Below, one piece after another: positions 1 through 54,985 of a stretch of DNA of 64,000 nucleotides. The DNA comes from Isurus oxyrinchus (lineage: Eukaryota). Under the pieces are notes generated by a model. The model saw only the letters and a program-made list of their open reading frames with translations. It was not told where the DNA came from and made no database searches. The position numbers and the translations under genes are program-made. The stretch is taken from NCBI GenBank assembly GCA_026770705.1, contig JANJGN010000102.1:434001-498000 (forward strand), written 5' to 3'. The number at the start of each line of letters is the position of its first letter. Position 1 is the stretch's first letter.

Positions 1-1941
1 CTGTGGAGGCCAGGTCATTGAGTGTATTTAAGACCAAGATAGATAGGTTCTTGATTGGTAAGGGGATCAGAGGTTACGAGGAGAAGGTGGGAGAATGAAG
101 TTGAGAAACATTTTATGCCATGATTGAATGGCGGAGCAGACTCGATGGGCCGATTGGCCTAATTTCTGCTTCTATGTCTTATGGTCTTATGGTCTAAGAG
201 ATAGGGAGGGTTGTAGGAGCTGCAGGAGGTTGCCATAAGATGTAGGAGCACAAGTAGGTCATTCGGCCCATCCAATCTGCTCTGCCATTCAATGAGATTA
301 TGGCTGATCTGATAAACCTCAAATCCGCTTCCCTGCCTTTTCCCCATAACCCTTGATTCCCTTATTGGTTAAAAGTCTGACACTTCCCTCCATGTCCAGC
401 CACACAGCAAAGATGCTCTCAGGCGGTGTACTTGAATGATAGAATTTTGCAGCACCAAAGGAGGCCATTCAGCCCATTGACTCTGTGCTATAAATCTGCT
501 GAGGCCACTGGAATTTTCATTAATCTGGATTGAGGAAATCTGGGTGATTTTATCTGAAGTCTTTTCTGCTCTGCCGCATTTTCTGAGGAGTTTTGAATCC
601 ATTGGCCTTCCATCTTCTGTAGCCAAGCCTTCCATCAACATAACCACCCTCCGCTTGCACCCTTACTTCTGATCTGCCGTGTGGATGGATTTTATCCAAG
701 AGTATAGCTCAGTATAGTTTTCTTATTTGTAAATAAATCTACCCATTAGTTTTAGCCTGAACGGAATGATTTACTTATAGTATCTACAATGTTTAAAGTC
801 AGGAGGAGGATTATTTTGGAACTAAAGGGTGATTGTTAATGTACGAGCTTTCAGGGTGTGAGCAAAGGCGTAGGCTTTGACTCACAGGGCGCTTAAACTT
901 CATTTAAATAAAATGTCATTCTGTCTCACAAGAGGCTCTTCAGTGCCTTTGGTCTACAAAGGGAGGATGGCGATTCCTGCCTATTTCAATTCTGCAATTA
1001 ACGGGTGTTTGCTTAGGCAAGGGTAGGTGTACAGGTCAGCCATGAGCTAACTGAACGGCAGGTGGAACAGGCTCAAGACACAGAATGGCCTGTTCCTGTG
1101 CTCTGATCAACATTCAGTTACACAACATTGAGCTTGGCAATGGGCCCTCCGCTGTTGAAAACCTTGCTGATGTTCACATGAGGAGGAGGAGTGGGCCAGA
1201 GGGCAACCAGCACCCATGGAGCGTAAGCCCTATTGACTTCAGGGAGAGAGGTGAGAAGACTTGGCAGAATCTGTTACATTAGCCAGCGTCCATGTTGATC
1301 TGACTTGTTAACACAGATCTGTAATAAAAATGCAGCAAAGTCTTTGTGAAGTTCTGGGGAAGAAACAGAGGAAGCATTCAAAAGCAAAACTGCATGTATT
1401 GTTAAAACATGGATTCATTTCTTTTCATTTCCTTCTAGACTCCTTCTAGACTCCTTCTAGTGGTACATGTTTGTATGGTAGCCTTGAGCAGACAAAATGC
1501 ACATTGCAATTTTCAATACACTGCGGTCATGTATATCCAAAGCCACTGATTAATGAGTGGTGTCTATTAACAGTGCATAGCACCAGAGAGTGCTGGGGCT
1601 TTAGCCTGCATATGCACAAGAGCCTCTTGTGAGACAGAATGACATTTTATTTAATGAAGTTGTTCCTCTCATTGGCAAGCTTAGTTGCATCCCTGGGGCA
1701 GCAATGTGCAGGGACGGGTGCAGCAGAAACGTCACTTGATTGGTTTCTGGCACTTTGTAGAAGCAAGATGCCAGGGATGTAGATGCCCGCCTGACAGCAG
1801 CCATGCCTGCCCACCCGCCCTCCCGTCTGTGTTGTGGCCCATAATCTCAAGGTGCCCAAGGGCCTGGGGAAAGAAACAAAGTTGTTCATACTAACCCGGC
1901 GCTGTGATATCTTCCGACCCTAATTCTACTTCGTTCCCCAG

Positions 1942-2043
1942 CTCCTAAGATGAAAAGCTGGCCGACTTACGGATACGTGACCGGGATAGTATTCATGATA
2001 CTTGGAATCATAGCCCTGGCTGGAGGAATCAGCAGGTGGAGAG
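1942..2043 (+). CDS. Second beta-chain (WB-like) paralogue: TM exon; upstream exons lie outside the window
   Basis: ttccccag| ... G|GTAGG, 102 nt, phase 1-1. PKMKSWPTYGYVTGIVFMILGIIALAGGISRWR carries GxxxxxxGxxxxxxG. Confidence 0.75.
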
Positions 2044-2108
2044 GTAGGAATATTGATGCATGTTCTAACCAACTCAGAAACTCCACCTGTTTGGCAATGA
2101 TGAGAGAT

Positions 2109-2502
2109 GGTAGTGTTGTGGTAATGTCACTGGACTAGTAACTCCAGAAGCCCAGGCTAATACTCTGGGGACACAGGGTATTCAAACCCCACCCCAGCTG
2201 CTGGTGGAATTTAAACTCAGTTAATAAAATCCAGAATTGGAAGCCAGTCTCAGTGATGGTGACCGTGAAACTACCATCGAATGTCATAAAAACCCCACCT
2301 GGTTCACTAATGTCCTTTAGGGAGGGAAATCTGCCGTCCTTACCCGGTCTGGCCGACACGTGACTCCAGACCCACAGCAATGCGGTTGACTCTTAACTGT
2401 CCCTCTGAAGTGGCCCTTAGCAAGATACTCAGTTTAGGGGGCAATTACAGACGGGCAACGATTGCTAGCCACGCCCACATCCCATGGAAGGATAAAGAAA
2501 AA
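2109..2502 (+). mobile_element. tRNA-derived SINE (further copies about 2900-3300 -, 29400-29710 -, 43478-43810 +, 44540-44810 -)
   Basis: A/B-box-like head, conserved ggttcactaatgtcctttagggagggaaatctgccgtcctt core, LINE-like tail ending A-rich. Confidence 0.75.
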
Positions 2503-2745
2503 TGATGTGCCTCCATGAGAGGGTGGCATGACAGATTTGTGTTTATAAGCCCCTGTGTACACAAAACCAGCCAGCCCATGAGTTCAGCCGTCACTTCCAT
2601 CTTTCCCCCATTAGGTGTTCCTGGATTGCAGAATGTGTTTCACTGGGGGATGGGTTTCACTGATTTCCGAGAGGATAGGGGCTGGCGGTGGGGAAGAGAG
2701 TGTCAGCCAAGGATTCGGAGCTAATGTTGACTATTTCTTTCCCAG

Positions 2746-2832
2746 GGCTCCATGCCTGTGGCTCACAACCTGAACCAAACCAGAGTCAAGTCAACACGCA
2801 TTCCAATGCGTATTCCTCTAACACGGATTTAG
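2746..2832 (+). CDS. Second WB-like gene: Ser-rich cytoplasmic exon
   Basis: ttctttcccag| ... G|GTAAC, 87 nt, phase 1-1. GLHACGSQPEPNQSQVNTHSNAYSSNTDL shares the HSNxxxS motif and size with 11236-11325. Confidence 0.68.
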   Translation, partial: GSMPVAHNLNQTRVKSTRIPMRIPLTRI

Positions 2833-3634
2833 GTAACAGAGTGACATTTGGTCTCTGCACTGTAGCACGCGTGCACAAGCACTTAATTTTCTTTTGTCCT
2901 TTCATGGGGATGTGGGCATTGCTGGCTAGCCCAGTATTTGTTGCCCATCCCCAATTGCCCCTTGAACTGAGTGGCTTGCTAGGGCCTTTCAGAGGGGAAG
3001 TTAAGAGTCAACCCCCACTGCTGTGGGACTGGAGTCATGTGTAGGCCAGACCAGGTAAGGACGACAGATTTCCTTCCCTAAAGGACATCAGTGAACCAGA
3101 TGGGGTTTTTACGACAATCGATGCCTAAAGGACAGCAGTTTTTACAACAAAGAAATCAATGCTATGAATATCTCGTTTTATATTCCAGATTTATTAATTA
3201 AATTTAAATCCCACCAATTGCTGTGTTGGGATTTGAACCTGTGCCCCCAAAGCATTAGCCTGGTCCTCTTAACTGTAAGTCCAGTGACAATACCACAATT
3301 CCACTGTCTCCTCAATGGTGCACTGTGTCTATAACCTCGCAGCTAAGTTCTGGATGGGAACTGCACTGTTGCTGAGGTGTGTGAAACTCATCCTCCACAT
3401 TAGCATGAGCTCTGCCCAACCTGCTTCAACTCTTGAGGTTCTTCAATCTTCCCAAGGACCCTTTCCCCAACTTCCTTCCCGATCTCAGTCCGGTAACTCC
3501 TGACGGAAAGCATGCAGGCAGACACAAGGCAAGGACGTTATCGGACCTGGCCGATGCTCACAGTCTGGCCTCCCACACAATGCACAACTCCTCAGATGAG
3601 CATAGAGGGTCTATGGACTCTGTGCCCCTGCAAG

Positions 3635-3666
3635 AGGCAGCGACTGCAGAGAAAGACAGATTGTAG
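3635..3666 (+). CDS. Second WB-like gene: last coding exon
   Basis: cccctgcaag| AG GCA GCG ACT GCA GAG AAA GAC AGA TTG TAG |GTAAAC = EAATAEKDRL*. Same KDxx-stop-donor design as 9131-9160. Confidence 0.55.
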
Positions 3667-4324
3667 GTAAACACCGAGAGAGACTATAGTGAAAGAGAGA
3701 CATGCTGCCAAAGCTTTTCATCTTGGACTCCTCAGGACGAACCTAAGAATGCCAACTGTCAGGCGATCACAACAGTTTATACTAGGGAGAAAGGTGCCAA
3801 TTGGTTGGCAGGTTGACTCTGATTGGCCGAGGAGTTACCATGGAGAAAGCAACAGGGAACCATTGGCTCCCTGAACTCCCGAGTAATTCAGAAAAGACAC
3901 AAACCTTGAACATGTTTCTTTTGCTTGCAGAGGGTGGGGCCCTGTGTATGAATGTATGTCACTTCGAGCAAGCATAAATGAGCCACATTACGTGCTTGAC
4001 TGATTATCTTAAATTGGTTGTTAGTGTCACTTGGCGCACTCAGGATTGTTCAGCAAATGCTGCACTTTGTCCTGACAAAAACATTGTTGGCAACACATCC
4101 CCTTTTCCAGCCATATTAAGTTCTGTGCTGTCAATTGACTGATGGTGAAATTACAGCAGCATTATAATTATCTTCTAAAATTAACGTGCTAGCACCATTC
4201 ACGTAGCCCTATACAGCTGCTCGGCAGCAATGGAGAATGTAACAGGAATTGGAGCGTTACAAACAATACTAAACTCTTGTTACCTGTAGATATCTGTCAT
4301 CCCCTCTTGCACTTTTCTTCCCAG

Positions 4325-4835
4325 GAGTATGGACACAGGGGGAGGCTAATCACCTCTATGTGGAAAGTGAACGGACTCCCAGACCCATACCCACTTGAAA
4401 CGGAGCATCAAACTCAGAACCCCCAACCCTCCCCATCCCCCTCCCAGATATCTGGAGACTGAGAGACGTCGGCTGAATCTGCCTCCACTCACCTTCCGAA
4501 AGAGCGTGTCCTGTGGAACCATGAGTCGGAATTCAGTCCAATCGATCACTTCAGAGACTGACTCAGAGGAGCTGACTCTGCGATACAATACACCTCTGGT
4601 TTAGTCTGTTTATTTAACTCTTACTACTCCAGGCTCTGTTAACCTGCGAGAAAAAAACTCATGGCTACTGTTCCACCCTTATTTAATTGATATAATTCTC
4701 ACGTGGCTCCTGCTTGTAGTTACTCCACCGTCACTTGTTACTTTCTGGATTGTTAAAATACATGAACGAGAATTATAAATGGAAACGAAATATACAAAAA
4801 CATAGGAACCAAATAAACTTTAATAGAAAATATGG
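4325..4835 (+). other. Probable 3' UTR exon of the second WB-like gene
   Basis: Pyrimidine-rich acceptor cttttcttcccag| at 4324, non-repeat sequence, AATAAA at 4812-4817. The end coordinate is approximate. Confidence 0.45.
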
Positions 4836-9130: not shown

Positions 9131-9160
9131 CTTATACCGTGTCCTTTGTCAAGCCATCTC
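9131..9160 (-). pseudogene. WB: WB last coding exon
   Basis: ttctgtcttccag| GA GAT GGC TTG ACA AAG GAC ACG GTA TAA G |GTGAGT = GDGLTKDTV*, with a donor 1 nt after the stop. Confidence 0.7.
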
Positions 9161-11065: not shown

Positions 11066-11235
11066 AAAGTGACTAAGGAGACAAGTAACGGAGCTTGTTT
11101 TATAAATGTACATGCCGTTCCCTTTCTGAATGCCAGATAGATGCTGCCCTCACGCAGAGCACAATGCACAGAGGCCACAGCATGAGCCAGGCTTTTGACT
11201 ATCTTGTTCCCAGGCACCGGGGGTGGGGCCATTAC

Positions 11236-11325
11236 CTGAAGTTGCACTGGAGGCTGAGGTGTTCGAATGCATGCTGGTCTGAGTGCGGTTCGACTTCCGC
11301 TGCTGTTGATTTTTCCAGAAAAGCA
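11236..11325 (-). pseudogene. WB: WB cytoplasmic exon 2 (Ser/Thr-rich)
   Basis: ttccctacag| ... G|GTAATG; 90 nt, phase 1-1. VLFWKNQQQRKSNRTQTSMHSNTSASSATS resembles the paralogous exon at 2746-2832. Confidence 0.72.
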
Positions 11326-11437
11326 CTGTAGGGAAGCAAGAGTGACCAAGAGCTTTTGTGAATATAAGTGAGGTTCTCGCCATGTCGATGCCCGCGGTCA
11401 TTTCTTTTTTTGTGTGTGTTTGTGTATTTACACTTAC

Positions 11438-11467
11438 CTTTTAGTCCAGGGATTCGGGGTTGGTAGC
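11438..11467 (-). pseudogene. WB: WB cytoplasmic exon 1
   Basis: ttccctttcag| GC TAC CAA CCC CGA ATC CCT GGA CTA AAA G |GTAAGT = (G)YQPRIPGLK; 30 nt, phase 1-1, strong splice sites. Confidence 0.75.
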
Positions 11468-11989
11468 CTGAAAGGGAAATAAATCAGGGTTGAAATCTTG
11501 ACAAGTGAATGGAACGGCCAGTTAGAAGTTAGAAACGGGGGCAGGGGTAGGCCATTTGGCCCCTCAAGCCTGCTCCATCATTTAACAAGATCATGACTGA
11601 TCTTCTACCTCCACGCTACTTCTCGGACCTGTCTCCAAATCCTTTAATTCCCTCAATGTCCAAAAATCCATCGACCTTATTACGAACTCAGGACTCTATG
11701 TATTAAATTGTCGCTTTTAATTCAAGGTGAAGTTGATTTTCCTGGAGAGGGGGTTGTTGATCATCCTAAACTCCGCCCGGAGACAGGCCCTTGTGATCCA
11801 TCGCCAAAACCTATGGATAATGAGGCGGCAATTTTGACACAAAGGAGGGACAGCTGGTTTTCTGTGCATAGACATAGAGACCAGGAAAGAGAGACAGGAA
11901 CTGCTGTGAAAAGCAGAGTTAAAGACTGACTTTTATGTTAGTCACCACAATCTGCTGGTAAGCACTGGCTCTCTGTACAAAGAGAGGGC

Positions 11990-12790
11990 ACATGGCCTTT
12001 ATTGAAAGAAGGTTGGATTATAAAAGTAGGGAAATCTTGCTACAACTGAACAGGGCATTGGTGAGATCACACCTGGGATACTGCGTACAGCGTTGGTCTC
12101 CTTACTTAAGGACGGATACACTCACATTGGAAGCCGTTCAGAGAAAATTCACTCGGCTGATTCCTGGGATGAAGGGGTTTGTCTTATAGGGAAAGGTTGA
12201 GCAGGTTGGGCCTCTACCCATTGGAGCTTAGAAGAATAAGAAGTGAAAACATTGACAATTCTGAGGTGAGAAGCTTGACGAGGTGGATGCTAAGATGTTT
12301 CCCCCTCGTGGGGGAATCTGGAACTGCTGGCGGAGGTCACAGTTTCAGAATAAGGGGTCTCCCATTGAAGGCGGAGATAAGAAGGAATTTCTTCTCTCAG
12401 ATGGTCGTTCATCTCTCCCCCAGAGAGGAGTGGAGGCTGGCTCACTGAATATGTTCAAAGCCGAGTTAGACAGATTTTTGATCGACAAGGGAGTCGAGGG
12501 TTATGGAGAGGGGACAGACAGGAAAGTGGAGTTGAGGCCACAATCAGATCAGTCAGGGTTATCCTAGGAACCAGCCGAGAGAACCTTCACTGAACTGCTT
12601 CTCATGCAGTGATATCCATTCTTATGTAAGGAGATCACAACTGCTCTCAGTGCTCCAGGTGCATTCTAACTAAGGCACAGGACAGCTCTATAAAGATTTC
12701 TCTACTCTGATACTCCATCCCCCTCGTAATAAAGGCCAACATTCCATTTGCCTTCCCAACCACTTGCTGCATCTACGTACCAACATTTTG
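11990..12790. mobile_element. CR1 3' fragments
   Basis: ALVRSHLGYCVQRWSPYLR and LGLYPLE motifs. Confidence 0.8.
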
Positions 12791-13155
12791 TGGCCGGATT
12801 AGTTTCAGTCAGAGAAGATCCTTCCGGATTTTCTCCCCCCAGTTAGCCTGGGTTTGTAACCTGGCTCCTCACCTCTCCCAGGTGATGAGGTGTCTGTCAG
12901 GTGCAGAGGTGACTGCAGATCCTGGGATGCACAAGCATCAGTGGGGCGGGCTGGATGTGACACGCCCATTCCAGGAAAATCCTTTTTTTAGGGTTTTGTG
13001 GAGATCCTCGAGTCTCAGGTAGTTTGCAATTCGCGGGAAAGCAGGAAGGTGCTGGGAACGACCTTGGACCTCAGAGTTGGCACAGGCAGGAACATCAATG
13101 TTCCAGTGCCCTTGGAAAAGAGCAGAATGATTTCAGCAGCCATGAGGCCCCGTAC

Positions 13156-13266
13156 CTTGACGTTTCATTCGAAAAACAGCTCCAGTTACGGCAGTCAGGA
13201 TGCCACTAATTCCGAACAATATTCCAACAATGGCCGCAGCAGACAGTGAGCTCTTACGTTGGGGGT
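13156..13266 (-). pseudogene. WB: WB connecting peptide/TM exon (frame intact)
   Basis: Acceptor ttttggaag|, donor G|GTACGG, 111 nt (the class II beta TM exon size). DPQRKSSLSAAAIVGILFGISGILTAVTGAVFRMKRQ carries the beta-chain GxxxxxxGxxxxxxG motif. Confidence 0.88.
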
Positions 13267-13439
13267 CTTCCAAAAAGCCAAGGACACAAAGGGCAGAAAG
13301 ATCGAAAAGTGAATGAAAATAAAACAGAAAATGTCATCCACTTCAGCACAACGAAATTCCACTTTCCAATCACTGTTTCTGCACAACTTTCCGATTGTCC
13401 AGTCAGTGCTTTTCCAGGATAAACCATTGCGCAATCCTG

Positions 13440-13782
13440 ACCCCATCAAACACTCCCAGGACAGGTACAGCATGGGATTAGATACAGATTAAAGCTCCCC
13501 CTACATTGTCCCCATCAAACACTCTCTGGACAGGTACAGCACGGGGTTAGATACAGAGTAAAGCTCCCTCTACACTGTCCCCATCAAACACTCCCAGGAC
13601 AGATACAGCACGGGGTTAGATACAGAGTAAAGCTCCCTCTACACTGTCCCCATCAAACACTCCCAGGACAGATACAGCACGGGGTTAGATACAGAGTAAA
13701 GCTCCCTCTACACTGTCCCCATCAAACACTCCCAGGACAGGTACAGCACGGGGTTAGATACAGAGTAAAGCTCCCTCTACAC
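13440..13782 (+). repeat. 69-bp minisatellite (resumes at 16595-16731 after the Penelope insertion)
   Basis: Unit ctctacactgtccccatcaaacactcccaggacaggtacagcacggggttagatacagagtaaagctcc. Confidence 0.95.
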
Positions 13783-16594
13783 CAAAGCTTCCTCTAGGAC
13801 CCTCCACCCCAGCCTGTCCCTCCGTCCCCACCCCATCTTCCAATCCCAGCCCCAGCCGTGTATTCACTATACCCCCTGACCTTCCCCTCTCCGATGCTGA
13901 ACGTTCAGTGCTCAGCAAAGGACTTAGTTTCATACCCTTACGCCCTCACCTCAATGAATTTCGGGCTCGGCATGATACTGAACTCTTCTTTCGCCGTCTT
14001 CGTCTCCGGGCTCACTTCTTTGGGCAGGAGTCCTCTCCCAGTTCAACGGATCCTTTTACCCATCTCCAATATTCTCCCTCCACCTGGACCCCTCCCTCTG
14101 GATTCTTACCTTCTCTTGATCTTTTCATTGAGAACTGTCGGCGCGACATTAGTCGTCTCAATTTCTCTGCTCCTCTCACCCATTCTAACCTGTCTCTCTC
14201 TGAACTTACTGCACTCCATTCTCTCAGGTCCAACCCTGACATTGTCATCAAACCCGCTGACAAGGGTGGTGCTGTTGTTGTCTGGCGCACTGACCTCTAC
14301 CTCGCGGAGGCTGAGCGTCAACTCGCAGACACTTCCTCCTACCTCTCCCTGGACCATGACCCCACCACTGAACATCAAGCCATTGTTTCCAGGACTGTCA
14401 CTGACCTCATCTCCTCTGGGGATCTCCCTCCCACAGCTTCCAACCTGATAGTCGCCCAACCTCGGACGGCCCGCTTCTATCTCCTACCTAAAATCCACAA
14501 ACAGAACTGCCCCGGTAGACCGATCGTCTCAGCTTGCTCCTGCCCCACAGAACTCATTTCTCGTTATCTTGACTCCCTTCTCTCTCCCCTTGTCCAGGCC
14601 CTTCCCACCTACATCCGTGATTCCTCTGACACCTTACGTCACATCAACAATTTCCAGTTCCCTGGCTCCAACCGCTTCCTCTTCACCATGGACGTCCAAT
14701 CCCTCTACACCTCCATCCCCCACCAGGATGGTCTGAGGGCCCTTAGCTTCTTCCTCGAACAGAGGCCCGAACAATCCCCATCCACCACTACTCTCCTCCG
14801 TCTGGCTGAACTTGTTCTCACGTTGAACAATTTCTCCTTCAACTCCTCTCACTTTCTCCAAATAAAAGGTGTGGCTATGGGTACCCGCATGGGCCCCAGC
14901 TATGCCTGTCTCTTTATGGGATATGTGGAACATTCCTTGTTGCAGTCCTACCCCGGCCCCCTTCCACAACTTTTTCTCCGGTACATCGATGATTACTTCG
15001 GTGCCGCTTCGTGCTCTCGTCGGGACTTGGAAAAATTTATTAATTTTGCTTCCAATCTCCACCCTTCCATCATTTTCACGTGGTCCATCTCTGACACTTC
15101 CCTTCCCTTCCTTGACCTCTCTGTCTCAATCTCTGGTGATAGACTGTCCACTAATATCCATTACAAACCCACCGACTCCCACAGCTACCTCGACTACAGC
15201 TCCTCACACCCCGCTTCCTGTAAGGACTCCATCCCATTCTCCCAGTTCCTTCGCCTTCGTCGCATCTGTTCCGATGATGCTACCTTCAAAAACGGTTCCT
15301 CTGACATGTCCTCCTTCTTCCTTAACCGAGGTTTTCCACCGACGGTCGTTGACAGGGCCCTCAACCGTGTCCGGCCCATCTCCCGCGCATCCGCCCTCAC
15401 GCCTTCTCCTCCCTCCCAGAAACATGATAGGGTCCCCCTTGTCCTCACTTATCACCCCACCAGCCTCCGCATTCAAAGGATCATCCTCCGCCATTTCCGC
15501 CAACTCCAGCATGATGACACCACCAAACACATCTTCCCTTCACCCCCCTTATCGGCATTCCGTAGGGATCGCTCCCTCCGGGACACCCTGGTCCACTCCT
15601 CCATCACCCCCTACTCCTCAACCCCCTCCTATGGCACCACCCCATGCCCACGCAAAAGATGTAACACCTGCCCCTTCACTTCCTCTCTCCTCACCGTCCA
15701 AGGGCCCAAACACTCCTTTCAAGTGAAGCAGCATTTCACTTGCATTTCCCCCAACTTAGTCTACTGCATTCGTTGCTCCCAATGTGGTCTCCTCTACATT
15801 GGAGAGACCAAACGTAAACTGGGCGACCGCTTTGCAGAACACCTGCGGTCTGTCCGCAAGAATGACCCAAACCTCCCTGTCGCTTGCCATTTTAACACTC
15901 CACCCTGCTCTCTTGCCCACATGTCTGTCCTTGGCTTACTGCATTGTTCCAGTGAAGCCCAACGCAAACTGGAGGAACAACACCTCATCTTCCTACTAGG
16001 CACCTTACAGCCTTCCGGTCTGAATATTGAATTCAATAACTTTAGGTCGTGAGCTCCCTCCCCCATCCCCACCCCCTTTCTGTTTCCCCCTTTTTTTTCC
16101 CCCTTTTTTTTCCCTATAAATTTTATAGATTTTTCTTTTCCCACCTATTTCCATTATTTTTAAATATTTTAAAATCTTTTATGCTCCCCCCACCCCCACT
16201 AGAGCTGTACCTTGAGTGCCCTACCATCCATTCTTAATTAGCACATTCGTTTAGATAATATCACCAACTTTAACTTTAACACCTATGTGTTCTTTTGTCC
16301 CATTGTCACTGACATCTTTTGATGATCTGCTTCTATCACAGCTTGTTTGTCTACACAAGCACCTCTGTCTCTCTCTCTCTCTCCGCCACCCCCCCCCCCG
16401 CCCGCCCCACACACCTTAAACCAGCTTATATTTCAACTCTTTCCTGGACTCGAAATCAAGTTCTGTCGAAGGGTCATGAAGACTCGAAACGTCAACTCTT
16501 TTCTTCTCCGCCGATGCTGCCAGACCTGCTGAGTTTTTCCAGGTAATTCTGTTTTTGTTTTGGATTTCCAGCATCCGCAGTTTCCTTTGTTTTA
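13783..16594 (+). mobile_element. Penelope-like retroelement, 5'-truncated, young
   Basis: Uninterrupted RT + GIY-YIG ORF and 3' terminal region. CCTCTACAC is duplicated at 13774-13782 and 16595-16603. Confidence 0.93.
13908..16052 (+). CDS. Penelope-type reverse transcriptase with GIY-YIG endonuclease
   Basis: IKPADKGGAVV, LPKIHK, RPIVS, MDVQSLYT, GVAMG, RYIDD; C-terminal NLVYCIRC..CGLLYIGETKR.L..RF.EH. The listed start is a GTG, and the frame continues to the truncation point. Confidence 0.93.
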   Translation: MLSKGLSFIPLRPHLNEFRARHDTELFFRRLRLRAHFFGQESSPSSTDPFTHLQYSPSTWTPPSGFLPSLDLFIENCRRDISRLNFSAPLTHSNLSLSELTALHSLRSNPDIVIKPADKGGAVVVWRTDLYLAEAERQLADTSSYLSLDHDPTTEHQAIVSRTVTDLISSGDLPPTASNLIVAQPRTARFYLLPKIHKQNCPGRPIVSACSCPTELISRYLDSLLSPLVQALPTYIRDSSDTLRHINNFQFPGSNRFLFTMDVQSLYTSIPHQDGLRALSFFLEQRPEQSPSTTTLLRLAELVLTLNNFSFNSSHFLQIKGVAMGTRMGPSYACLFMGYVEHSLLQSYPGPLPQLFLRYIDDYFGAASCSRRDLEKFINFASNLHPSIIFTWSISDTSLPFLDLSVSISGDRLSTNIHYKPTDSHSYLDYSSSHPASCKDSIPFSQFLRLRRICSDDATFKNGSSDMSSFFLNRGFPPTVVDRALNRVRPISRASALTPSPPSQKHDRVPLVLTYHPTSLRIQRIILRHFRQLQHDDTTKHIFPSPPLSAFRRDRSLRDTLVHSSITPYSSTPSYGTTPCPRKRCNTCPFTSSLLTVQGPKHSFQVKQHFTCISPNLVYCIRCSQCGLLYIGETKRKLGDRFAEHLRSVRKNDPNLPVACHFNTPPCSLAHMSVLGLLHCSSEAQRKLEEQHLIFLLGTLQPSGLNIEFNNFRS

Positions 16595-16855
16595 CCTCTA
16601 CACTGTCCCCATCAAACACTCCCAGGACAAGTACAGCACCGGGTTAGATACAGTGTAAAGCTCCCTCTGCATTGTCCCCATCAAACACTCCCAGGACAGG
16701 TACAGCACGGGGTTAGATACAGAGTAAAGCTGTGTTTACACCTTCACCCAGGGTTGATTGGTCAGTTTATGAGGCATTGTTTGTCTCCCACCCTCTTTTA
16801 CTGGACACATCGAGCCTATTGCTTAATGCATGTATCGAGGGTGATCAGGACCTAC

Positions 16856-17126
16856 CCCAGTTGGTGCGGTGTCCATCTGGAAAAGTGACATGCTCCACAA
16901 AGCACGTGTACATGTCCTCTGTCTTGGGGTCAATGTTGATGAATGCAGCCGTCTGGAAGGCCTTCTCACTGTTGGGAAGGATCTGAGTCTGTACCACTTG
17001 CTCGTCAATGTTCCCATCATTTTTTAGCCAGGGCGCTTGGATCGAAGCCGGCGACTGTACACTGAAGTTGGCTGGAATGGTCAAAGTCTTCCAGATCGTA
17101 GAAGGAGATGGTCACTGAAGGGGACG
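16856..17126 (-). pseudogene. WB: WB beta2 Ig C1-set exon with a frameshifting deletion
   Basis: Acceptor ccattctcag|, donor TGG G|GTAGG. Frame A reads SPSVTISFYDLEDFDHSSQLQCTVAGFDPSA; frame B reads WLKNDGNIDEQVVQTQILPNSEKAFQTAAFINIDPKTEDMYTCFVEHVTFPDGHRTNW. Length 271 nt, 11 short of the usual 282-nt beta2 exon. Confidence 0.88.
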
Positions 17127-17264
17127 CTGAGAATGGACAGGGTTATTTTCAATTCAGCACTCCCTCTCACACCTGCTCCCAATATTTCCTCCAAGCCCGT
17201 CTCCCACTCTCACTGGGCTACTGCCTCCAAGGACAGTGACTGTTCTCTGCTACTTACCTTCATT

Positions 17265-18020
17265 AGGAACACAGGAACATGAGGAGGCCCATTCAGCCCC
17301 TCCTCGAGCTTGTAACACAAGAACAGGAGGAGGCCCATTCAGACCCTCCTCAAGCCTGTTACACAGGAACCAGAGGAGGCCCATTCAGCCCCTCGAGCCT
17401 ATTACACAGGAACAGGACAAGGCTCATTCAGTCCGTCATGAAGCCTGTTGCACAGGAACAGGAGGAGACCCATTCACCCCCTCCTTAAGCCTGTTACACA
17501 GGAACGGGGGAAGCCATTCAGCCTCCATTTCGAGCCTGTTACACAGGAACAGGAGGAGGCCATTCAGCCCCTCTCGAGTCTGTTATACAGGAACAGGATG
17601 TGGCCATTCTGCCACCTCTTGAGTCTGTTACACAGGAACAGGAAGAGTCCAGCCCCCTTCTCGAGCCTGTTACACAGGAACAGGAGGAGGCCATTCAGCC
17701 CCTCTCGAGTCTGTTATACAGGAACAGGAGGTGGCCATTCTGCCACCTCTTGAGTCTGTTACACAGGAACAGGAAGAGTCCAGCCCCCTTCTCGAGCCTG
17801 TTACACAGGAACAGGAGGAGGCCATTCAGCCCCTTTCGAGTCTGTTATACAGGAACAGGAGGTGGCCATTCTGCCACCTCTTGAGTCTGTTACACATGAA
17901 CAGGAAGAGTCCAGCCCCCTTCTCGAGCCTGTTACACAGGAACAGGAGGAGGCTATTCAGACCCCTCTTGAGCCTCTAACACAGTAACAAAAAAGAGGCC
18001 ATTCTGCATCCTCATGCCTA
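17265..18020 (+). repeat. About 43-bp minisatellite with a 131-bp higher-order unit (also about 23545-23865)
   Basis: Unit acacaggaacaggaggaggccattcagcccctcgagcctgtt. Confidence 0.9.
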
Positions 18021-22400: not shown

Positions 22401-24120
22401 ATGATTATATGGCTTCACTTTCAGTGTGTTAATTTGAGGAGCAGTGGCTACTGCAGGGGCAGTCAAAGCACTGGGTAAAGTCCCCATACAGAAGCCAGGC
22501 CACTGACCGATTGACCGGTCTTCGTTGGGTCAAATCGTGACCTGCCCTCAAAGAAAATGACACTTAACTGTTCTCGTAAGGGAACTACAGGAATTTTTAA
22601 GTCAACATGAATAAACGGTTAGGGTCTTGAATAAACAGGGGTTCCCAGGAGAGTGTGACAGTATGCACAGGGGTCCCCGAGGGACTGTGTCAGTATTTAC
22701 AGGGGGTCCCCGAGGGGTGTGTCAGTATTTACAGGTGGTCCCGGGGAGTATGTCAGTATTTACAGGGGGTCCCCGAGGGGTGTGTCAGTATTTACAGGGG
22801 GTCCCGGGGAGTATGTCAGTATTTACAGGGGGTCCCGGGGAGCATGTCAGTATTTACAGGGGGTCCCGGGGAGTGTGTCAGTGTTTACAGGGGGTCCCGG
22901 GGTGTGTGTCAGTATTTACAGGGGGTCCCGGGGAATGTGTCAGCTGCTGCACTGATTGCATATGGGAAATAACATTACCGAGAGGAGGCATGTTCGAGCA
23001 CCCACTCCAACTGGGGGACACCAAAGTGCATAAATCACAGAGGTGTCACGCGAGTTTGACAAATCCTCCACCAAATCCAAAGGCTTCTCAAGAGTCCTTA
23101 AGAAAACAGCCTTTGAGTTCAGGATCACTGCTTCTGGCAATGAAAGAACAGGCCTGCTAGTATCGGTTGAATCTCAGCACAGTTAATTATTTGAGAAATG
23201 TCATCACCTTAGTTTCAGTGACAGTGGATTTGATTTGTGTTTTCAGCCTTGCTCGGGCGCAAAGAGTTCCTGGTTAGGCTCATTTGAGATTAATCACACC
23301 TCTTATGTAAAGACTCTTATGTAATTCTCTCTGGCAGCATGATACGATGCTGTGCAATTCCAAGAATTCCCCATATCTAATCCTGCACATCTGAGGGGTT
23401 TTTTTGGGCAGTCTACCTGACCTCTGCAGGGTGCATCAGCTCGGATCAGAGTTGTGGTTGTGGGGTTTAGTTGTGTTAAGCTGTCTTGTTCCTGTAAAGG
23501 TACGGGAACTGCCTGTGGGGAAGTGGTCCAGATGGAGTTAAAAAGGAACAGGAGGAGAACATTCAGCCCCTCACGAGCATGATACACAGGAACAGGAAGA
23601 GGCTATTCAGCACCTCTTGAGCCTGTTGCACAGGAACAGGAGAATGCCATTCAGCCCCTCTTAAGCCTGTTTCTCAGGAACAGAAGCAGGGCATTCAGCT
23701 CCATTCGAGCCTTTTTCACAGAAACGGTAGGAGGCCATTCAGCCCCTCTCGGGCCTGTTGCATAGGAACAGGAGGAGGCCATTGAGCACCAACACCCCCT
23801 GCCTCACACCAGCCTGTTATACATAAACAGGAGGAGGCCATCCAGCCCTCTCGAGCCTATTATGCCTGGGGGAGGAATCTGTCTCTTGGCCTCGCGCAGC
23901 TGCTTGTGGGACCTTGCTGTGCGCAAAGAAGCTAAGGTGGTAACAGCAGTGACTGCAGTCCAGAAATCGTCCATGGGCTACAAAATGTGTTGGGACGTCC
24001 TGAGGTGGGAGGGGGGCAAGGGGGTGAGGTGAAAGTGTCAGTTGAGGAAGGCTCCTGACTCCCCCACCCCGCTTAAACCGACGTTTCAAATCCTGACACT
24101 CCCCCTAACCCCCTCCCGCC

Positions 24121-24214
24121 TCACATCAGTGAATTGACAGCTTTCTCATCCATGGCATAAACGGAGTAATCTGATCCGTCACAGACACAATGCAGTTCCT
24201 GTAAGGAAGTGGAT
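24121..24214 (-). pseudogene. WB: WB: probable truncated 5' part of the beta1 exon
   Basis: Acceptor ctgttctttcag| followed, one base out of phase, by LQELHCVCDGSDYSVYAMDEKAVNSLM* and then unrelated G-rich sequence. Position and early Cys fit a beta1 start. Confidence 0.5.
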
Positions 24215-24683
24215 CTGAAAGAACAGAGGTGTGAGGAGTCCCCTGTCTGAGATGGGGGCGGGGGTGGGGTGGGGGGGGGGGGGGGGGGGGGGGGTTGGTG
24301 GGGGGCTGGGAGTTAAAAATAAAATATTACCCAACTTCATCAGAACTGTGAGCTGCTTTGCGGTCAACCTCCTGTTTTGAGAAGAGTGGAACTGATTTTG
24401 CAGGGGTCAGCACAGACAGCTGAGCTCACAGCGCTGACACGTGCTTGCTCTCTGACAATTTATTTACCCAGCCATAAACAGAGATGCTGGGCATCTCCTG
24501 AATAAATGCAGGAGAGCAGAAGGCGTTCTCTTGCACACTCTTAATGTCACTGAGCTGTTTTGTGGCTTTTGCCAGTTGTAGTTGCATCTGAGGAAGGAAT
24601 GATTTGTTGAGAGTGAGAGAGGGAGAGAGAGGTAGAGAGAGATAAGTCGTGAGCAGGAAAGAGCGACTTTAACTTGCTGGAAC

Positions 24684-24768
24684 ATGGGCTGTCCAAGGCA
24701 AAAAAATAAAGCTGGTTTTCTCTGCGCATTGCTGTTAGCATGGCTGTTGGGCTCCGCGATAGAATGTG
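24684..24768 (+). CDS. WA: MHC W-category alpha chain (WA), exon 1: signal peptide
   Basis: ATG at 24684 reads MGCPRQKNKAGFLCALLLAWLLGSAIEC (basic N-region, hydrophobic core). Ends in a phase-1 donor G|GTAAG, as MHC leader exons do. Confidence 0.85.
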
Positions 24769-32482: not shown

Positions 32483-32761
32483 ACGACCCCATAGTGTTGC
32501 TTTATCCGGGTGAACCCTTCACCTTAGGGGGGAAGAACACCCTGAATTGTTTTGTGAGTCATCTGTTTCCGCCAGTGGCCCATGTGTCCTTCCTGAAGAA
32601 CGATCAGCCCCTATCTGGGCAAGTGAGGTCCTCGCAGTTCACCTTCGACAACAGCTGGACGTTTCAAATCTTGAAATATGTGCAAATTGAGCCTGCTGTC
32701 GGGGACAACTATTCGTGTGTGGTGGAGCTAGTCACCAAGGAGCAGTTCCAAGCCTACTGGG
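32483..32761 (+). CDS. WA: WA exon 3: alpha2 Ig C1-set domain with beta-2-microglobulin-like residues
   Basis: Acceptor ccttccag|, 279 nt, phase 1-1. Reads DDPIVLLYPGEPFTLGGKNTLNCFVSHLFPPVAHVSFLKNDQPLSGQVRSSQFTFDNSWTFQILKYVQIEPAVGDNYSCVVELVTKEQFQAYW. Two Ig cysteines; FTFDNSWTF parallels b2m LSFSKDWSF; VSFLKN lacks the canonical C-strand Trp. Confidence 0.92.
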
Positions 32762-33645
32762 GTACAGTCCATCATTAAAACTGGGGTACATTGATCATTA
32801 ACACTGCGGTATACTTATCATTAATACTGGGGTACAGACCATCATTAACACTGGGGTACAGATCATCATTAACACTGGGGTACAGTCCATCATTAGCACT
32901 GGGGTACAGATCATCATTAACACTGGGGTACCCTGATCATTAACACTGGGGTACAGACCATCATTAACACTGGGGTACAGATCATCATTAACACTGGGGT
33001 ACAGTCCATCATTAGCACTGGGGTACAGATCATCATTAACACTGGGTTACCCTGATCATTAACACTGGGGTACAGACCATCATTAACACTGGGGTACAGA
33101 TCATCATTAACACTGGGGTACAGTCCATCATTAGCACTGGGATACAGTTATCATTAACACTGGGATATACTGATCATAAACACTGGGGTACAATTATTAA
33201 CACTGGGATACACTGATCATTAACACTGGGGTACCCTGATCATTAACACTGGGGTGCAGTCCATCATTAACACTGGGGTACACTGATCATTAACACTGGA
33301 ATACAATCCATCATTAACACTGGCGTACAGTCTGTCATTAACACTGGGATATACTGATCGTTAACACTGGGATAAAGTGATCATTAACACTGGGGTACAC
33401 TGACCATTAACACTGGGGTACACTGATCATTAACACTGGGGTACACTGAACCTTAGCACTGGGATACACTGAACCTTAGCACTGGGATACACTGATCATT
33501 AGCACTGGGGTTTACTGAACATTAGCACCAGGGTACAATCCATCATTAACACTGGGATATACTAATCATTAACACTGGGGTACACTGATCATTAACATTT
33601 GGGTAAAGTCCATCATTCACAGTGGGATACAGTATGTCATTAACA
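32757..33645 (+). repeat. About 22-24-bp minisatellite starting at the WA alpha2 splice donor
   Basis: Unit ctggggtacagtccatcattaaca. Confidence 0.93.
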
Positions 33646-53139: not shown

Positions 53140-54985
53140 GATACACACACTCTGTCTCTCTCTCTCACGCACACTCTCTCTGATGCATACACACACACTC
53201 TCATACACACACACACTCTCTCTCTCACATACACACACACACTCACACACTCTCTCACATACNNNNNNNNNNNNNNNNNNNNNNNNNNNNNNNNNNNNNN
53301 NNNNNNNNNNNNNNNNNNNNNNNNNNNNNNNNNNNNNNNNNNNNNNNNNNNNNNNNNNNNNNNNNNNNNNNNNNNNNNNNNNNNNNNNNNNNNNNNNNNN
53401 NNNNNNNNNNNNNNNNNNNNNNNNNNNNNNNNNNNNNNNNNNNNNNNNNNNNNNNNNNNNNNNNNNNNNNNNNNNNNNNNNNNNNNNNNNNNNNNNNNNN
53501 NNNNNNNNNNNNNNNNNNNNNNNNNNNNNNNNNNNNNNNNNNNNNNNNNNNNNNNNNNNNNNNNNCTCTCTCACATTCGCACTCTCGCTAACACACACAC
53601 TCTCTCTCACATACACACTCTTTCATACACATACATGTACACTCACAAATATTTGCACATGCGCGCATACACACACTGATGCACACATGCACACAGAAAG
53701 GCACACACATAGACACAGTCACATGCACACTTGCACACACAGCCACACATCTCAGCACACAAGTGCACATACATGCACACACACTCACTTGCACACACAG
53801 CCACACATCTCAGCACACGCACATGCACATACACGCACATACATTTGCACAGACACAGCCACTCACACACGCACTCTCAAACACATTCACCCTCACACAA
53901 CACACGCACATGTGCATGCACATACAGTCACTCTGACACATACACACAGTCATTCTCTCACACACACACACAATCTCACAACCATTTGCACATGCATGCA
54001 CACACACACACACACACATACACTCGCACACACAAAGACACAGGCATGTGCACACTTGCACATACAGCCACATATCTCAGCACAGAAACACATGCACACA
54101 CTCACTCACTCACTTACACACACACACAGCCACACACAGGCTCTCAAACACATTCACTCACACACACTCAAACACACATTTACACACACACACATACACA
54201 CACATACACAGTCACACACACAAACACTGTCACACACACCCAGTCACTCACACACCCACTCACACACATTCTCACAAACACTTACCCCCAGTCACTCACA
54301 CACACATTCCCAGTCACTCTCTCACACACACATCCCCACTCTCACACACCCACAGTCACTCGCTCACACACACACACATCCCCACAGACTCACACACACA
54401 CTCTCACAAACATTTGCACATGTGCGCATACACACACATACACAGATGCACATGTGCACACACAGAGGCACACACATATACAGTCACATGCACACTCGCA
54501 CACATATGCACATCTCAGCACACAAACACACACATGCACATACAGACACACACACTCACTTGCACACACAACACACACACACACAGCAACACACTCTCAA
54601 ACACATATTCACTCACACACACTCACCACAAACACACACGCACACTTGCGCACACCCAGTCACACACACACACACCCAGTCACTCGCACATGTGCGCATG
54701 CACACACACTTGCATGTGTACACATATGTGCACACACGCATAGACACATGCATTCTTACACACAGATGCACATCTCACCTCCCAGCACATGTGCACATGC
54801 GTACACACACACACTCACTTGCACACACAGCCACACGCTCATACACATGCATACTCTCAAACACATTCACTCAAACACACGCATACACACTCACCACACA
54901 AACACATGCACGCACATACACACACACGTACATACACAAACACTCACTTGCACACACAGCCACATATACAAACGCGCACGCAGAC
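53140..54985. repeat. CA/CT-rich low-complexity tract containing an assembly gap (N at 53263-53565)
   Basis: Seen directly. Confidence 0.95.

What the first reader, a model, noticed from the sequence alone, without database searches (positions are those of the whole stretch)
16856..17126. Partner beta chain has a class I alpha3-like Ig domain but is frameshifted
Seen: ILPNSEKAFQ aligns with class I alpha3 RPxGDGTFQ (Pro kept) and lacks the Trp of class II beta2 NGDWTFQ, complementary to the Trp on the WA side. About 4 residues are missing between GFDPSA and WLKN. The exon is 271 nt rather than 282, giving a premature TGA, and GFYP reads GFDP. Inference: a WB pseudogene or null allele beside an intact WA; an assembly error is possible.
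Basis: partly seen in the sequence, partly recalled or inferred. Interest (0 to 1): 0.8.

Follow-up and report, generated by a model that had tools for sequence, protein, structure and literature searches.

The report
Dead shark W-category MHC beta gene
This is the immunoglobulin-like exon of a shark "W-category" MHC beta-chain gene that has lost 11 bases, which shifts its reading frame, so it is an ordinary recently dead copy of a gene family described in 2021.

Summary
Window 16856-17126 (minus strand) is a 271-nt Ig C1-type exon with good splice sites. Its frame switches between GFDPSA and WLKNDG, giving TGA at 17019-17017.

Independent contigs of a DNA run of the same organism reproduce the exon with 0 differences at full single-copy depth. 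A sister organism has 11 extra letters at 17029, giving a 282-nt exon. Its translation is 93 of 93 identical to great white shark XP_041035560. So this is not an assembly error.

All 8 of 8 related WB proteins read GFYP-x-A-[LV]-N-[VI]-[ST]-W there.

In the assembly the gene is broken further:
- The signal-peptide exon has lost one base and then runs into a minisatellite.
- No beta1 exon exists in the window.
- The TM and tail exons are still open.

Low-depth, apparently spliced RNA contigs of the same organism carry the ancestral letters, GFYP included. Another WB copy or allele is therefore expressed.

The class I alpha3-like traits (Pro57, no Trp61) are already published for WB (PMC8713811). 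Verdict: a young WB pseudogene in a lamnid shark, a new member of a known kind, of low to moderate interest.

The parts
16856..17126 (-). beta2 (Ig C1-set) exon of a W-category MHC beta-chain (WB) gene, 271 nt instead of 282, frame broken
   Evidence: Splice sites and the two frames. tblastn with white shark P0034: E 5e-44, in two pieces (93.8% and 86.2% identity) in different frames. Pfam C1-set E 1e-6 on the C-terminal piece.
17029..17032 (.). site of the 11-nt deletion; placement is ambiguous over 3 nt because a 3-nt direct repeat flanks the lost segment
   Evidence: table 4: 11 letters put in behind 17029 in organism B run X8 (50 of 50 depth), 0 of 44 in organism A run X1, 0 of 6.2 in X15. 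Repeat and ambiguity worked out.
17017..17019 (-). premature TGA, four codons after the deletion in the upstream frame
17041..17043 (-). GAT (Asp) codon in place of TAT (Tyr) of the conserved GFYP motif
   Evidence: 17043 C>A in X8 and X15; codon 28 is TAT in organism B and GAT in the window. 8 of 8 homologues have GFYP.
22942..22991 (-). remnant of the signal-peptide exon: MPPLGNVISHM in one frame, AISAAA in the next frame (one base lost at 22959), then no further leader sequence
   Evidence: the only hit with 7 or more of 11 identities among 127,936 positions (9 of 11), and the only exact AISAAA among 127,966 positions, sharing base 22959. Sequence read.
22635..22943 (.). 31-nt minisatellite (9.8 copies) that abuts and replaces the 3' part of the leader exon
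13156..13266 (-). connecting-peptide/transmembrane exon, open, with AG and GT sites, phase 1 to 1
   Evidence: tblastn with P0034: 87.5% identity, E 2e-15. X1 contig 12730-13265 has 0 differences.
11438..11467 (-). cytoplasmic exon 1 (GYQPRIPGLK), intact
   Evidence: (10 of 10 identical to P0034). X1 contig 11210-11567 has 0 differences.
11236..11325 (-). cytoplasmic exon 2 (Ser-rich), intact
   Evidence: (85.7% identity). X1 contig 11210-11567 has 0 differences.
9132..9160 (-). last cytoplasmic exon (GDGLTKDTV, then stop), intact
32521..32772 (+). alpha2 exon of the head-to-head WA gene (context: the presumed partner chain)
Evidence: VSFLKND, DNSWTFQ. Pfam C1-set E 4.8e-15.

Best explanation
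The stretch is the membrane-proximal Ig-like (beta2) exon of a W-category MHC beta-chain gene (WB) of a lamnid shark. The gene lies head-to-head with a WA gene and tail-to-tail with a second, different WB gene. It is the counterpart of the great white shark gene that encodes XP_041035556-563.

In this species the gene is a young unprocessed pseudogene. An 11-nt deletion between two 3-nt direct repeats, typical of replication slippage, removed the C-strand residues LNVT, including a conserved N-glycosylation sequon. It shifts the frame into a TGA four codons later. The Tyr of GFYP became Asp.

In the assembly the signal-peptide exon has also lost a base and its 3' half, and the whole beta1 exon is gone. 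No WB chain can be made from this locus. The downstream TM and tail exons are still open, so the decay is recent, after the split from the white shark lineage.

Shown here: the deletion is real in reads, the sister species has the intact exon, and the homologues are conserved at that place. Inferred: fixation in the species, the slippage mechanism, orthology by position, and that the expressed WB seen in RNA comes from a paralogue.
For: Real deletion:
- An X1 contig (organism A DNA) covers 16919-17200 with 0 differences and 0 gaps, at depth 44.
- Neighbouring zero-difference contigs of the same run have depth 47.3-50.8.
- X8 (organism B) has one 710-letter contig over 16702-17200 with 14 other letters and the 11 letters put in.

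Sister species and homologues:
- The organism B exon is 282 nt and translates 93 of 93 identical to P0034 (Carcharodon), 88 of 93 to Cetorhinus P0039.
- 8 of 8 WB homologues keep GFYP and the four residues.
- P0034 belongs to Carcharodon gene XP_041035556-563, whose accessions lie next to those of the second WB type, XP_041035565/566. This mirrors the adjacency in the window.

Other lesions and intact parts:
- No beta1 exon: tblastn with P0001, P0031, P0019, P0034 and P0033 gives nothing credible. An HMM of 8 beta1 domains gives best E 6.6 over 3074 six-frame segments.
- The leader remnant is frameshifted and cut by a minisatellite.
- The downstream exons are open with splice sites.

Changes on the window's lineage: H9Y, Y28D and T75M are absent from Carcharodon and Cetorhinus, and also from the X15 contigs.
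Against: - X1 may come from the same individual as the assembly, so it excludes an assembly or consensus error but says little about the population.
- A minor version with white-shark-like letters exists in X1 at 16912 (depth 16.8 of 55) and in the intron at 11744-12007 (depth 14-22). A second haplotype or copy is therefore present, and X1's tables were truncated ('some differences were not counted').
- X15 contigs labelled organism A carry the ancestral letters, and both end at the deletion site. This could be an intact allele and not a paralogue.
- The loss of beta1 and of the leader's 3' half was seen only in the assembly.
- 12 of the 14 X8 differences were listed. The two unlisted ones could lie in the exon. 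They would have to be silent, since the translation already equals P0034.
Confidence: 0.8

Rival explanations
1. A polymorphic null allele: the deletion haplotype segregates in the species beside an intact, expressed allele of the same gene.
For::
- X15 (organism A label, another sample and study) has exon contigs with the ancestral letters at 16912, 17025, 17043, 17095 and 17100, and the window's letter at 16939.
- One of them (236 letters) runs on for 131 letters unlike the intron at the exon edge, so it looks spliced.
- X1 holds a minor version with G at 16912 (16.8 of 55).
- X1 differs from the window at 11774 in all 3 contigs.
Against: - The deletion-bearing contig in X1 has depth 44, against 47-51 for single-copy neighbours. 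A heterozygote should give about half.
- The X15 version differs from the window at 5 places plus the indel in about 250 nt, but from the white shark at only 1 listed place. That is a lot for alleles and expected for a constrained paralogue.
- Earlier notes place another WB gene about 65-68 kb upstream (s1-871696, s1-871786; not checked).
- The 5' lesions would have to ride on the same haplotype.
Confidence: 0.15
2. An assembly or sequencing artefact: the true exon is 282 nt and in frame.
For: None from the tools.
Against: -: Logan's independent contig of run X1 reproduces the window letter for letter across the site at depth 44.
- The change is an 11-nt loss in non-repetitive sequence, not a homopolymer slip.
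- It comes with three window-specific amino-acid replacements in the same exon.
Confidence: 0.02
3. The locus still makes a product, for example by skipping the broken exon (all exons are phase 1-1) or from the open TM and tail exons.
For: - The TM and tail exons and their splice sites are intact.
- White shark models include isoforms that skip the TM exon (P0038, P0042).
Against: - There is no beta1 exon and no complete signal peptide in the window.
- RNA-like runs X15 and X17 have depth 0 over the TM exon bins 13010-13409 and over 11210-11409.
- The two X15 pieces on the beta2 exon do not carry the window's letters.
Confidence: 0.03

Closest known systems
W-category MHC beta chain (WB) of Okamura, Dijkstra et al. 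2021 (PMC8713811); banded houndshark (Triakis scyllium) protein P0033 and great white shark XP_041035560 (P0034)
   Same: - The same beta2 exon, with Pro57 and no Trp61.
- The same CP/TM and Ser-rich multi-exon tail ending GDGLTKDTV.
- Head-to-head with a WA gene whose alpha2 has Trp61 and Phe at position 37.
- 86-94% identity to the white shark protein per exon piece, and 54-77% to Triakis in beta2.
   Different: - 11 nt lost, causing a frameshift and a stop.
- GFYP reads GFDP.
- The leader is truncated and beta1 is absent, so this is a dead copy.
- Position 61 is Lys, not the 'mostly Gly' of WB. This is shared with the white shark and basking shark proteins.
MHC class I heavy-chain alpha3 domain (MR1 in particular)
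   Same: The best solved-structure sequence matches of the 58-aa C-terminal piece are MR1 alpha3 domains: the top 4 rows, E 7.7e-9 to 1.2e-6. The first class II beta chain comes at E 1.1e-5. Pro57 is kept and there is no Trp61.
   Different: The gene has class II beta architecture. The orthologues have one membrane-distal domain, one Ig domain and a TM region. It is not a class I heavy chain.
Conventional MHC class II beta chain (beta2 domain)
   Same: Exon plan, phase 1-1 Ig exon, GFYP...W...YxC C1-set frame. NCBI's automatic names for the orthologues are 'class II ... beta chain-like'.
   Different: It lacks the invariant Trp61 of class II beta2 (PMC8713811, section 8). The Pfam MHC_II_beta model scores only E 0.031, below its cut-off, on the orthologue's beta1.

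Membership tests
W-category MHC beta chain (WB) | Class II beta-type gene plan: signal peptide, beta1, Ig-like beta2, and CP/TM/CY exons | tested here: not met
   Beta2, CP/TM and three CY exons are present. The leader is only a frameshifted remnant. No beta1 exon is present. The locus is a remnant of such a gene, not an intact member.
W-category MHC beta chain (WB) | Beta2 is a C1-set Ig domain with the conserved Cys pair and Trp37 | tested here: met
   QLQC, WLKN and YTC are all present but split over two frames. Pfam C1-set gives E 1e-6 on the C-terminal piece and no hit for the 31-aa N-terminal piece alone.
W-category MHC beta chain (WB) | Pro57 present and no Trp at position 61 of beta2 (class I alpha3-like; PMC8713811, section 8) | tested here: met
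   ILPNSEKAFQ has Pro at 57 and Lys at 61. Of the 8 aligned homologues, 0 have Trp there, 7 have Pro57 and 3 have Gly61.
W-category MHC beta chain (WB) | Paired in the genome, head-to-head, with a WA gene whose alpha2 has Trp61 and Phe/Leu37 | tested here: met
   The WA alpha2 exon at 32521-32772 (+) reads VSFLKND and DNSWTFQ and matches C1-set at E 4.8e-15. The rest of WA was not checked here (note s1-864163).
W-category MHC beta chain (WB) | Sequence kinship with the named WB of banded houndshark | tested here: met
   tblastn of P0033 (Triakis scyllium 'MHC class II beta chain like protein') on the exon gives E 7.7e-28. That P0033 is the paper's WB is my inference from species and name.
Conventional MHC class II beta chain | Invariant Trp61 in beta2 | tested here: not met
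   Lys is at that place. 0 of 8 homologues have Trp.
MHC class I heavy chain | Two membrane-distal domains (alpha1, alpha2) and alpha3 in one chain | tested here: not met
   The orthologous proteins have a single membrane-distal domain before the Ig domain.
Unprocessed pseudogene | A disabling lesion that is real in the DNA, while the orthologue in a sister species is intact | tested here: met
   X1 against X8; 282 nt, 93 of 93 identical to P0034.
Unprocessed pseudogene | No functional transcript from the locus | tested here: inconclusive
   the X15 contigs on the exon carry the other version's letters. Depth is 0 on the TM and tail exons in X15 and X17. These runs are small (116 and 150 million letters) and their RNA label is a guess.

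The most novel reading that the evidence does not exclude
In this lamnid shark both WB genes that flank intact, transcribed WA genes in this part of the cluster are dead. This one has lost 11 nt, beta1 and half its leader. The second type, at 619-701, is frameshifted and truncated. If so, the WA chains must be served in trans by one surviving WB encoded tens of kilobases away (one beta chain for several alpha chains), or act without a beta partner. That would make this species a natural knock-out for testing whether W-category chains need their in-cis partner.
Probability: 0.2. Interest if true: 0.5.

Novelty: new member of a known kind. Interest (0 to 1): 0.25.

Why it matters
[quoted passage not shown] A species-specific loss of a WB gene whose white shark counterpart is intact has three uses:
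- It shows that the family turns over by birth and death, like other MHC families.
- It warns annotators not to pair this WA with its neighbour.
- It gives a dated natural knock-out next to an apparently working WA.

It adds no new kind of molecule. The class I-like traits of the domain are the published hallmark of WB.

Tried and rejected
Alternative readings of the frame break
- I considered a one-base slip in the run of six A's at 17020-17025. Rejected: removing one A gives GFDPSALAKNDG, which still lacks the conserved Trp and is still four residues short. Organism B shows the difference is an 11-letter block.
- I considered that the short C strand is normal for this WB subgroup. Rejected: 8 of 8 homologues have the full length.

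Search for the beta1 exon
- tblastn with five proteins found nothing credible. The weak match of P0034 residues 37-80 at 24463-24344 (E 1.1, with a stop inside) lies 5' of the leader remnant.
- The beta1 HMM did not back that match. Its 12 best rows, up to E 36, do not include it.

Searches that led nowhere
- The search for homologous proteins with the 88-aa stop-free segment of the exon found no candidate. By the tool's length rule this says nothing of longer kin.
- Literature: 'W-category' with 'MHC' and 'class II' gave 3 papers. 'W-category' with 'pseudogene' gave 1 paper, on axolotl; I read its one passage on W-category, which does not concern WB decay.
- In PMC8713811 I read Results parts 1-2 and the multigene-family section. 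The words 'pseudogene' and 'frameshift' occur 0 times in its main text.
- Its supplements are closed. SI Fig. S11 covers the white shark cluster of three pairs, and there are also Table S1 and the Datasets. They may already state which shark copies are broken and give subgroup names. The name 'Nds3L' comes only from earlier notes, not from anything I saw.

Limits kept
- The spliced model was never joined. Window exons were searched one by one, and the joined step was left out.
- The N run at 53263-53565 was not touched.

Full report
WHAT IS THERE

On the minus strand an AG acceptor (17128-17127) is followed by an exon from 17126 to 16856 and a GT donor (16855-16854). The exon is 271 nt long.

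Read from its phase-1 start it gives SPSVTISFYDLEDFDHSSQLQCTVAGFDPSALAKK and then TGA at 17019-17017. The frame that fits the phase-1 donor gives WLKNDGNIDEQVVQTQILPNSEKAFQTAAFINIDPKTEDMYTCFVEHVTFPDGHRTNW.

The C-terminal piece matches Pfam C1-set (E 1e-6, above the cut-off). The 31-aa N-terminal piece alone gives no hit.

WHAT GENE IT IS

An exhaustive HMMER search with the 58-aa piece gave 32 proteins at E up to 0.001. The best was a 302-aa Scyliorhinus protein, P0001 (E 2e-21).

Searches with P0001 and then P0034 gave 5 and 6 proteins:
- Scyliorhinus canicula
- Triakis scyllium, named 'MHC class II beta chain like protein'; this is the banded houndshark, the species in which Okamura et al. 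defined the W-category
- Carcharodon carcharias
- Heptranchias perlo
- Pristiophorus japonicus
- Rhincodon typus

The 90% cluster of P0034 holds five isoforms of one white shark gene (XP_041035556-563), a second white shark gene (XP_041035497) and a basking shark protein.

tblastn of P0034 on the window finds the following:
- the beta2 exon in two pieces in different frames (93.8% and 86.2% identity, E 5e-44)
- the CP/TM exon, 13156-13266
- three cytoplasmic exons: 11438-11467, 11236-11325 and 9132-9160

The CP/TM and cytoplasmic exons are open and have AG and GT sites.

The gene lies tail-to-tail with a second, different WB-type gene (619-4395, plus strand) and head-to-head with a WA gene. 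The WA alpha2 exon (32521-32772) shows Phe at the Trp37 place and Trp in DNSWTFQ. These are the W-category hallmarks described in PMC8713811 (sections read).

IS THE FRAMESHIFT REAL

The look-up of sequencing runs listed 24 runs, of which 20 hold the stretch or a part of it. They include 4 DNA runs of one sample of organism A (0.76-0.88 of the words) and many runs of organism B (about 0.52). I laid 4 of the 24 (X1, X15, X8, X17) on 11210-17200.

X1 (organism A, DNA):
- A 380-letter contig covers 16919-17200 with 0 other letters and 0 gaps, at depth 44.
- Neighbouring zero-difference contigs of the same run have depth 49 (16705-16811), 47.3 (12730-13265) and 50.8 (11210-11567).
- The 271-nt form is therefore in the reads at about full single-copy depth.

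X8 (organism B, DNA):
- One 710-letter contig covers 16702-17200 with 14 other letters, 12 of which are listed.
- It has 11 letters put in behind 17029 (depth 50 of 50).

Applying these differences in a script gives a 282-nt exon. Its translation is 93 of 93 identical to white shark P0034, 89 of 93 to the second white shark gene and 88 of 93 to the basking shark. Organism B is thus, by inference, the great white shark. The window comes from another lamnid that is 2.8% different in this 499-nt stretch.

The lost block sits between two copies of a 3-nt repeat, which is why its place is ambiguous over 17029-17032. That is the usual footprint of slippage (inference).

All 8 aligned homologues keep GFYP-x-A-[LV]-N-[VI]-[ST]-W, an N-glycosylation sequon in the C strand.

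OTHER DAMAGE

Compared with the white shark, the basking shark and the X15 contigs, the window's lineage has H9Y, Y28D (GFYP to GFDP) and T75M in this exon.

Upstream, the only match to the white shark leader is MPPLGNVISHM at 22959-22991. It has 9 of 11 identities and is the only hit with 7 or more among 127,936 positions. It is followed in the next frame by AISAAA at 22942-22959, the only exact hit among 127,966 positions. This implies one lost base. After that the sequence is a 31-nt minisatellite (22635-22943) instead of the rest of the signal peptide.

No beta1 exon is found:
- tblastn with five WB proteins gives nothing credible.
- An HMM built from 8 beta1 domains gives best E 6.6 among 3074 six-frame segments of the whole window.

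These 5' lesions were seen in the assembly only. The single read-laying run did not cover them.

ANOTHER WB IS EXPRESSED

X15 is labelled organism A, comes from another sample and study, and holds 116 million letters. Its RNA label is the tool's guess. I accept it, because a DNA run that small could not assemble a single-copy exon.

It gives two low-depth contigs inside the exon:
- 16876-17032, depth 3.8
- 17029-17125, depth 2.4

They carry the white-shark-like letters at 16912, 17025, 17043, 17095 and 17100, and the window's letter at 16939. They therefore encode His9, Tyr28 and Thr75. Both end at the deletion site. The second contig runs on for 131 letters that do not fit the intron beyond the exon edge, as a spliced message would.

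X1 also holds a minor version with G at 16912 (16.8 of 55). It has white-shark-like minor contigs at 11744-12007 (depth 14-22).

Given the full depth of the deletion contig, I read this as a second WB copy and not an allele. Earlier notes place a WB gene 65-68 kb upstream, which I did not check. The allele reading keeps about 0.15.

COMPARISON WITH WHAT IS KNOWN

They are exactly what PMC8713811 reports for WB beta2.

The PDB sequence search agrees. The top four rows are MR1 alpha3 (E 7.7e-9 to 1.2e-6), ahead of class II beta chains (from 1.1e-5).

Position 61 is Lys here and in the white shark and basking shark, not the 'mostly Gly' of the family.

The paper's main text does not mention pseudogenes. 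Its supplements, which show the white shark cluster, were closed.

VERDICT

This is a recently dead lamnid copy of a known WB gene. It is a new member of a known kind and of low to moderate interest.

The more interesting open point is that the other WB gene in the window is also broken in beta2. How the neighbouring WA genes find a partner is worth a look.

Noticed in passing
window 619-701 (+), with later exons at 1941-2072, 2739-2834 and 4324-4395: The second WB-type gene is closest to white shark XP_041035565 and basking shark XP_078391005. It is also broken in beta2. AKPSINITTLRLH and PLLLICRVDGFYPR lie in different frames, with about four residues missing between them. The exon then stops (V, TAG), and the remaining 60-odd residues of the Ig domain are found nowhere in the window. 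Its TM and tail exons are open. None of this was checked with reads.
   Followed up: partly
window 13908-16052 (+), inside the intron between the beta2 and TM exons: An open 714-aa ORF has reverse transcriptase (RVT_1, E 6.6e-8) and a weak GIY-YIG match (E 6.9e-4, below cut-off). This points to a Penelope-like retroelement. It is bracketed by arrays of the same 69-nt repeat (13437-13782 and 16595-16731). Contigs of all four runs pile on it at very high depth. Two short-sided joints in the white-shark-like run (13715 to 16711 and 13782 to 16708) might mean that species lacks the insertion, but they could equally be repeat cross-matches.
   Followed up: partly
window 11744-12007 and 11774: DNA run X1 of the window's own organism differs from the window at 11774 in all 3 contigs. 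It also holds minor contigs (depth 14-22) with 5-8 white-shark-like letters. This indicates a second haplotype or a paralogous copy of this intron.
   Followed up: no
window 22991 to 24684: The WB leader remnant lies about 1.7 kb from the noted start of WA. The 'extremely compact shared promoter' placed at 24121-24768 by another note does not therefore hold for this pair. The stretch between contains a 44-nt minisatellite (23544-23787) and a 52-nt G run (24254-24305).
   Followed up: partly
window 17269-18004: A minisatellite of 89/131-nt units starts 143 nt upstream of the beta2 exon. A related 44-nt array lies at 23544-23787. The introns of this gene are largely repeats.
   Followed up: no
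proteins P0038 and P0042 (white shark XP_041035562 and XP_041035563): Predicted white shark isoforms join the beta2 exon directly to the first cytoplasmic exon, skipping the TM exon. That would give a soluble WB chain.
   Followed up: no
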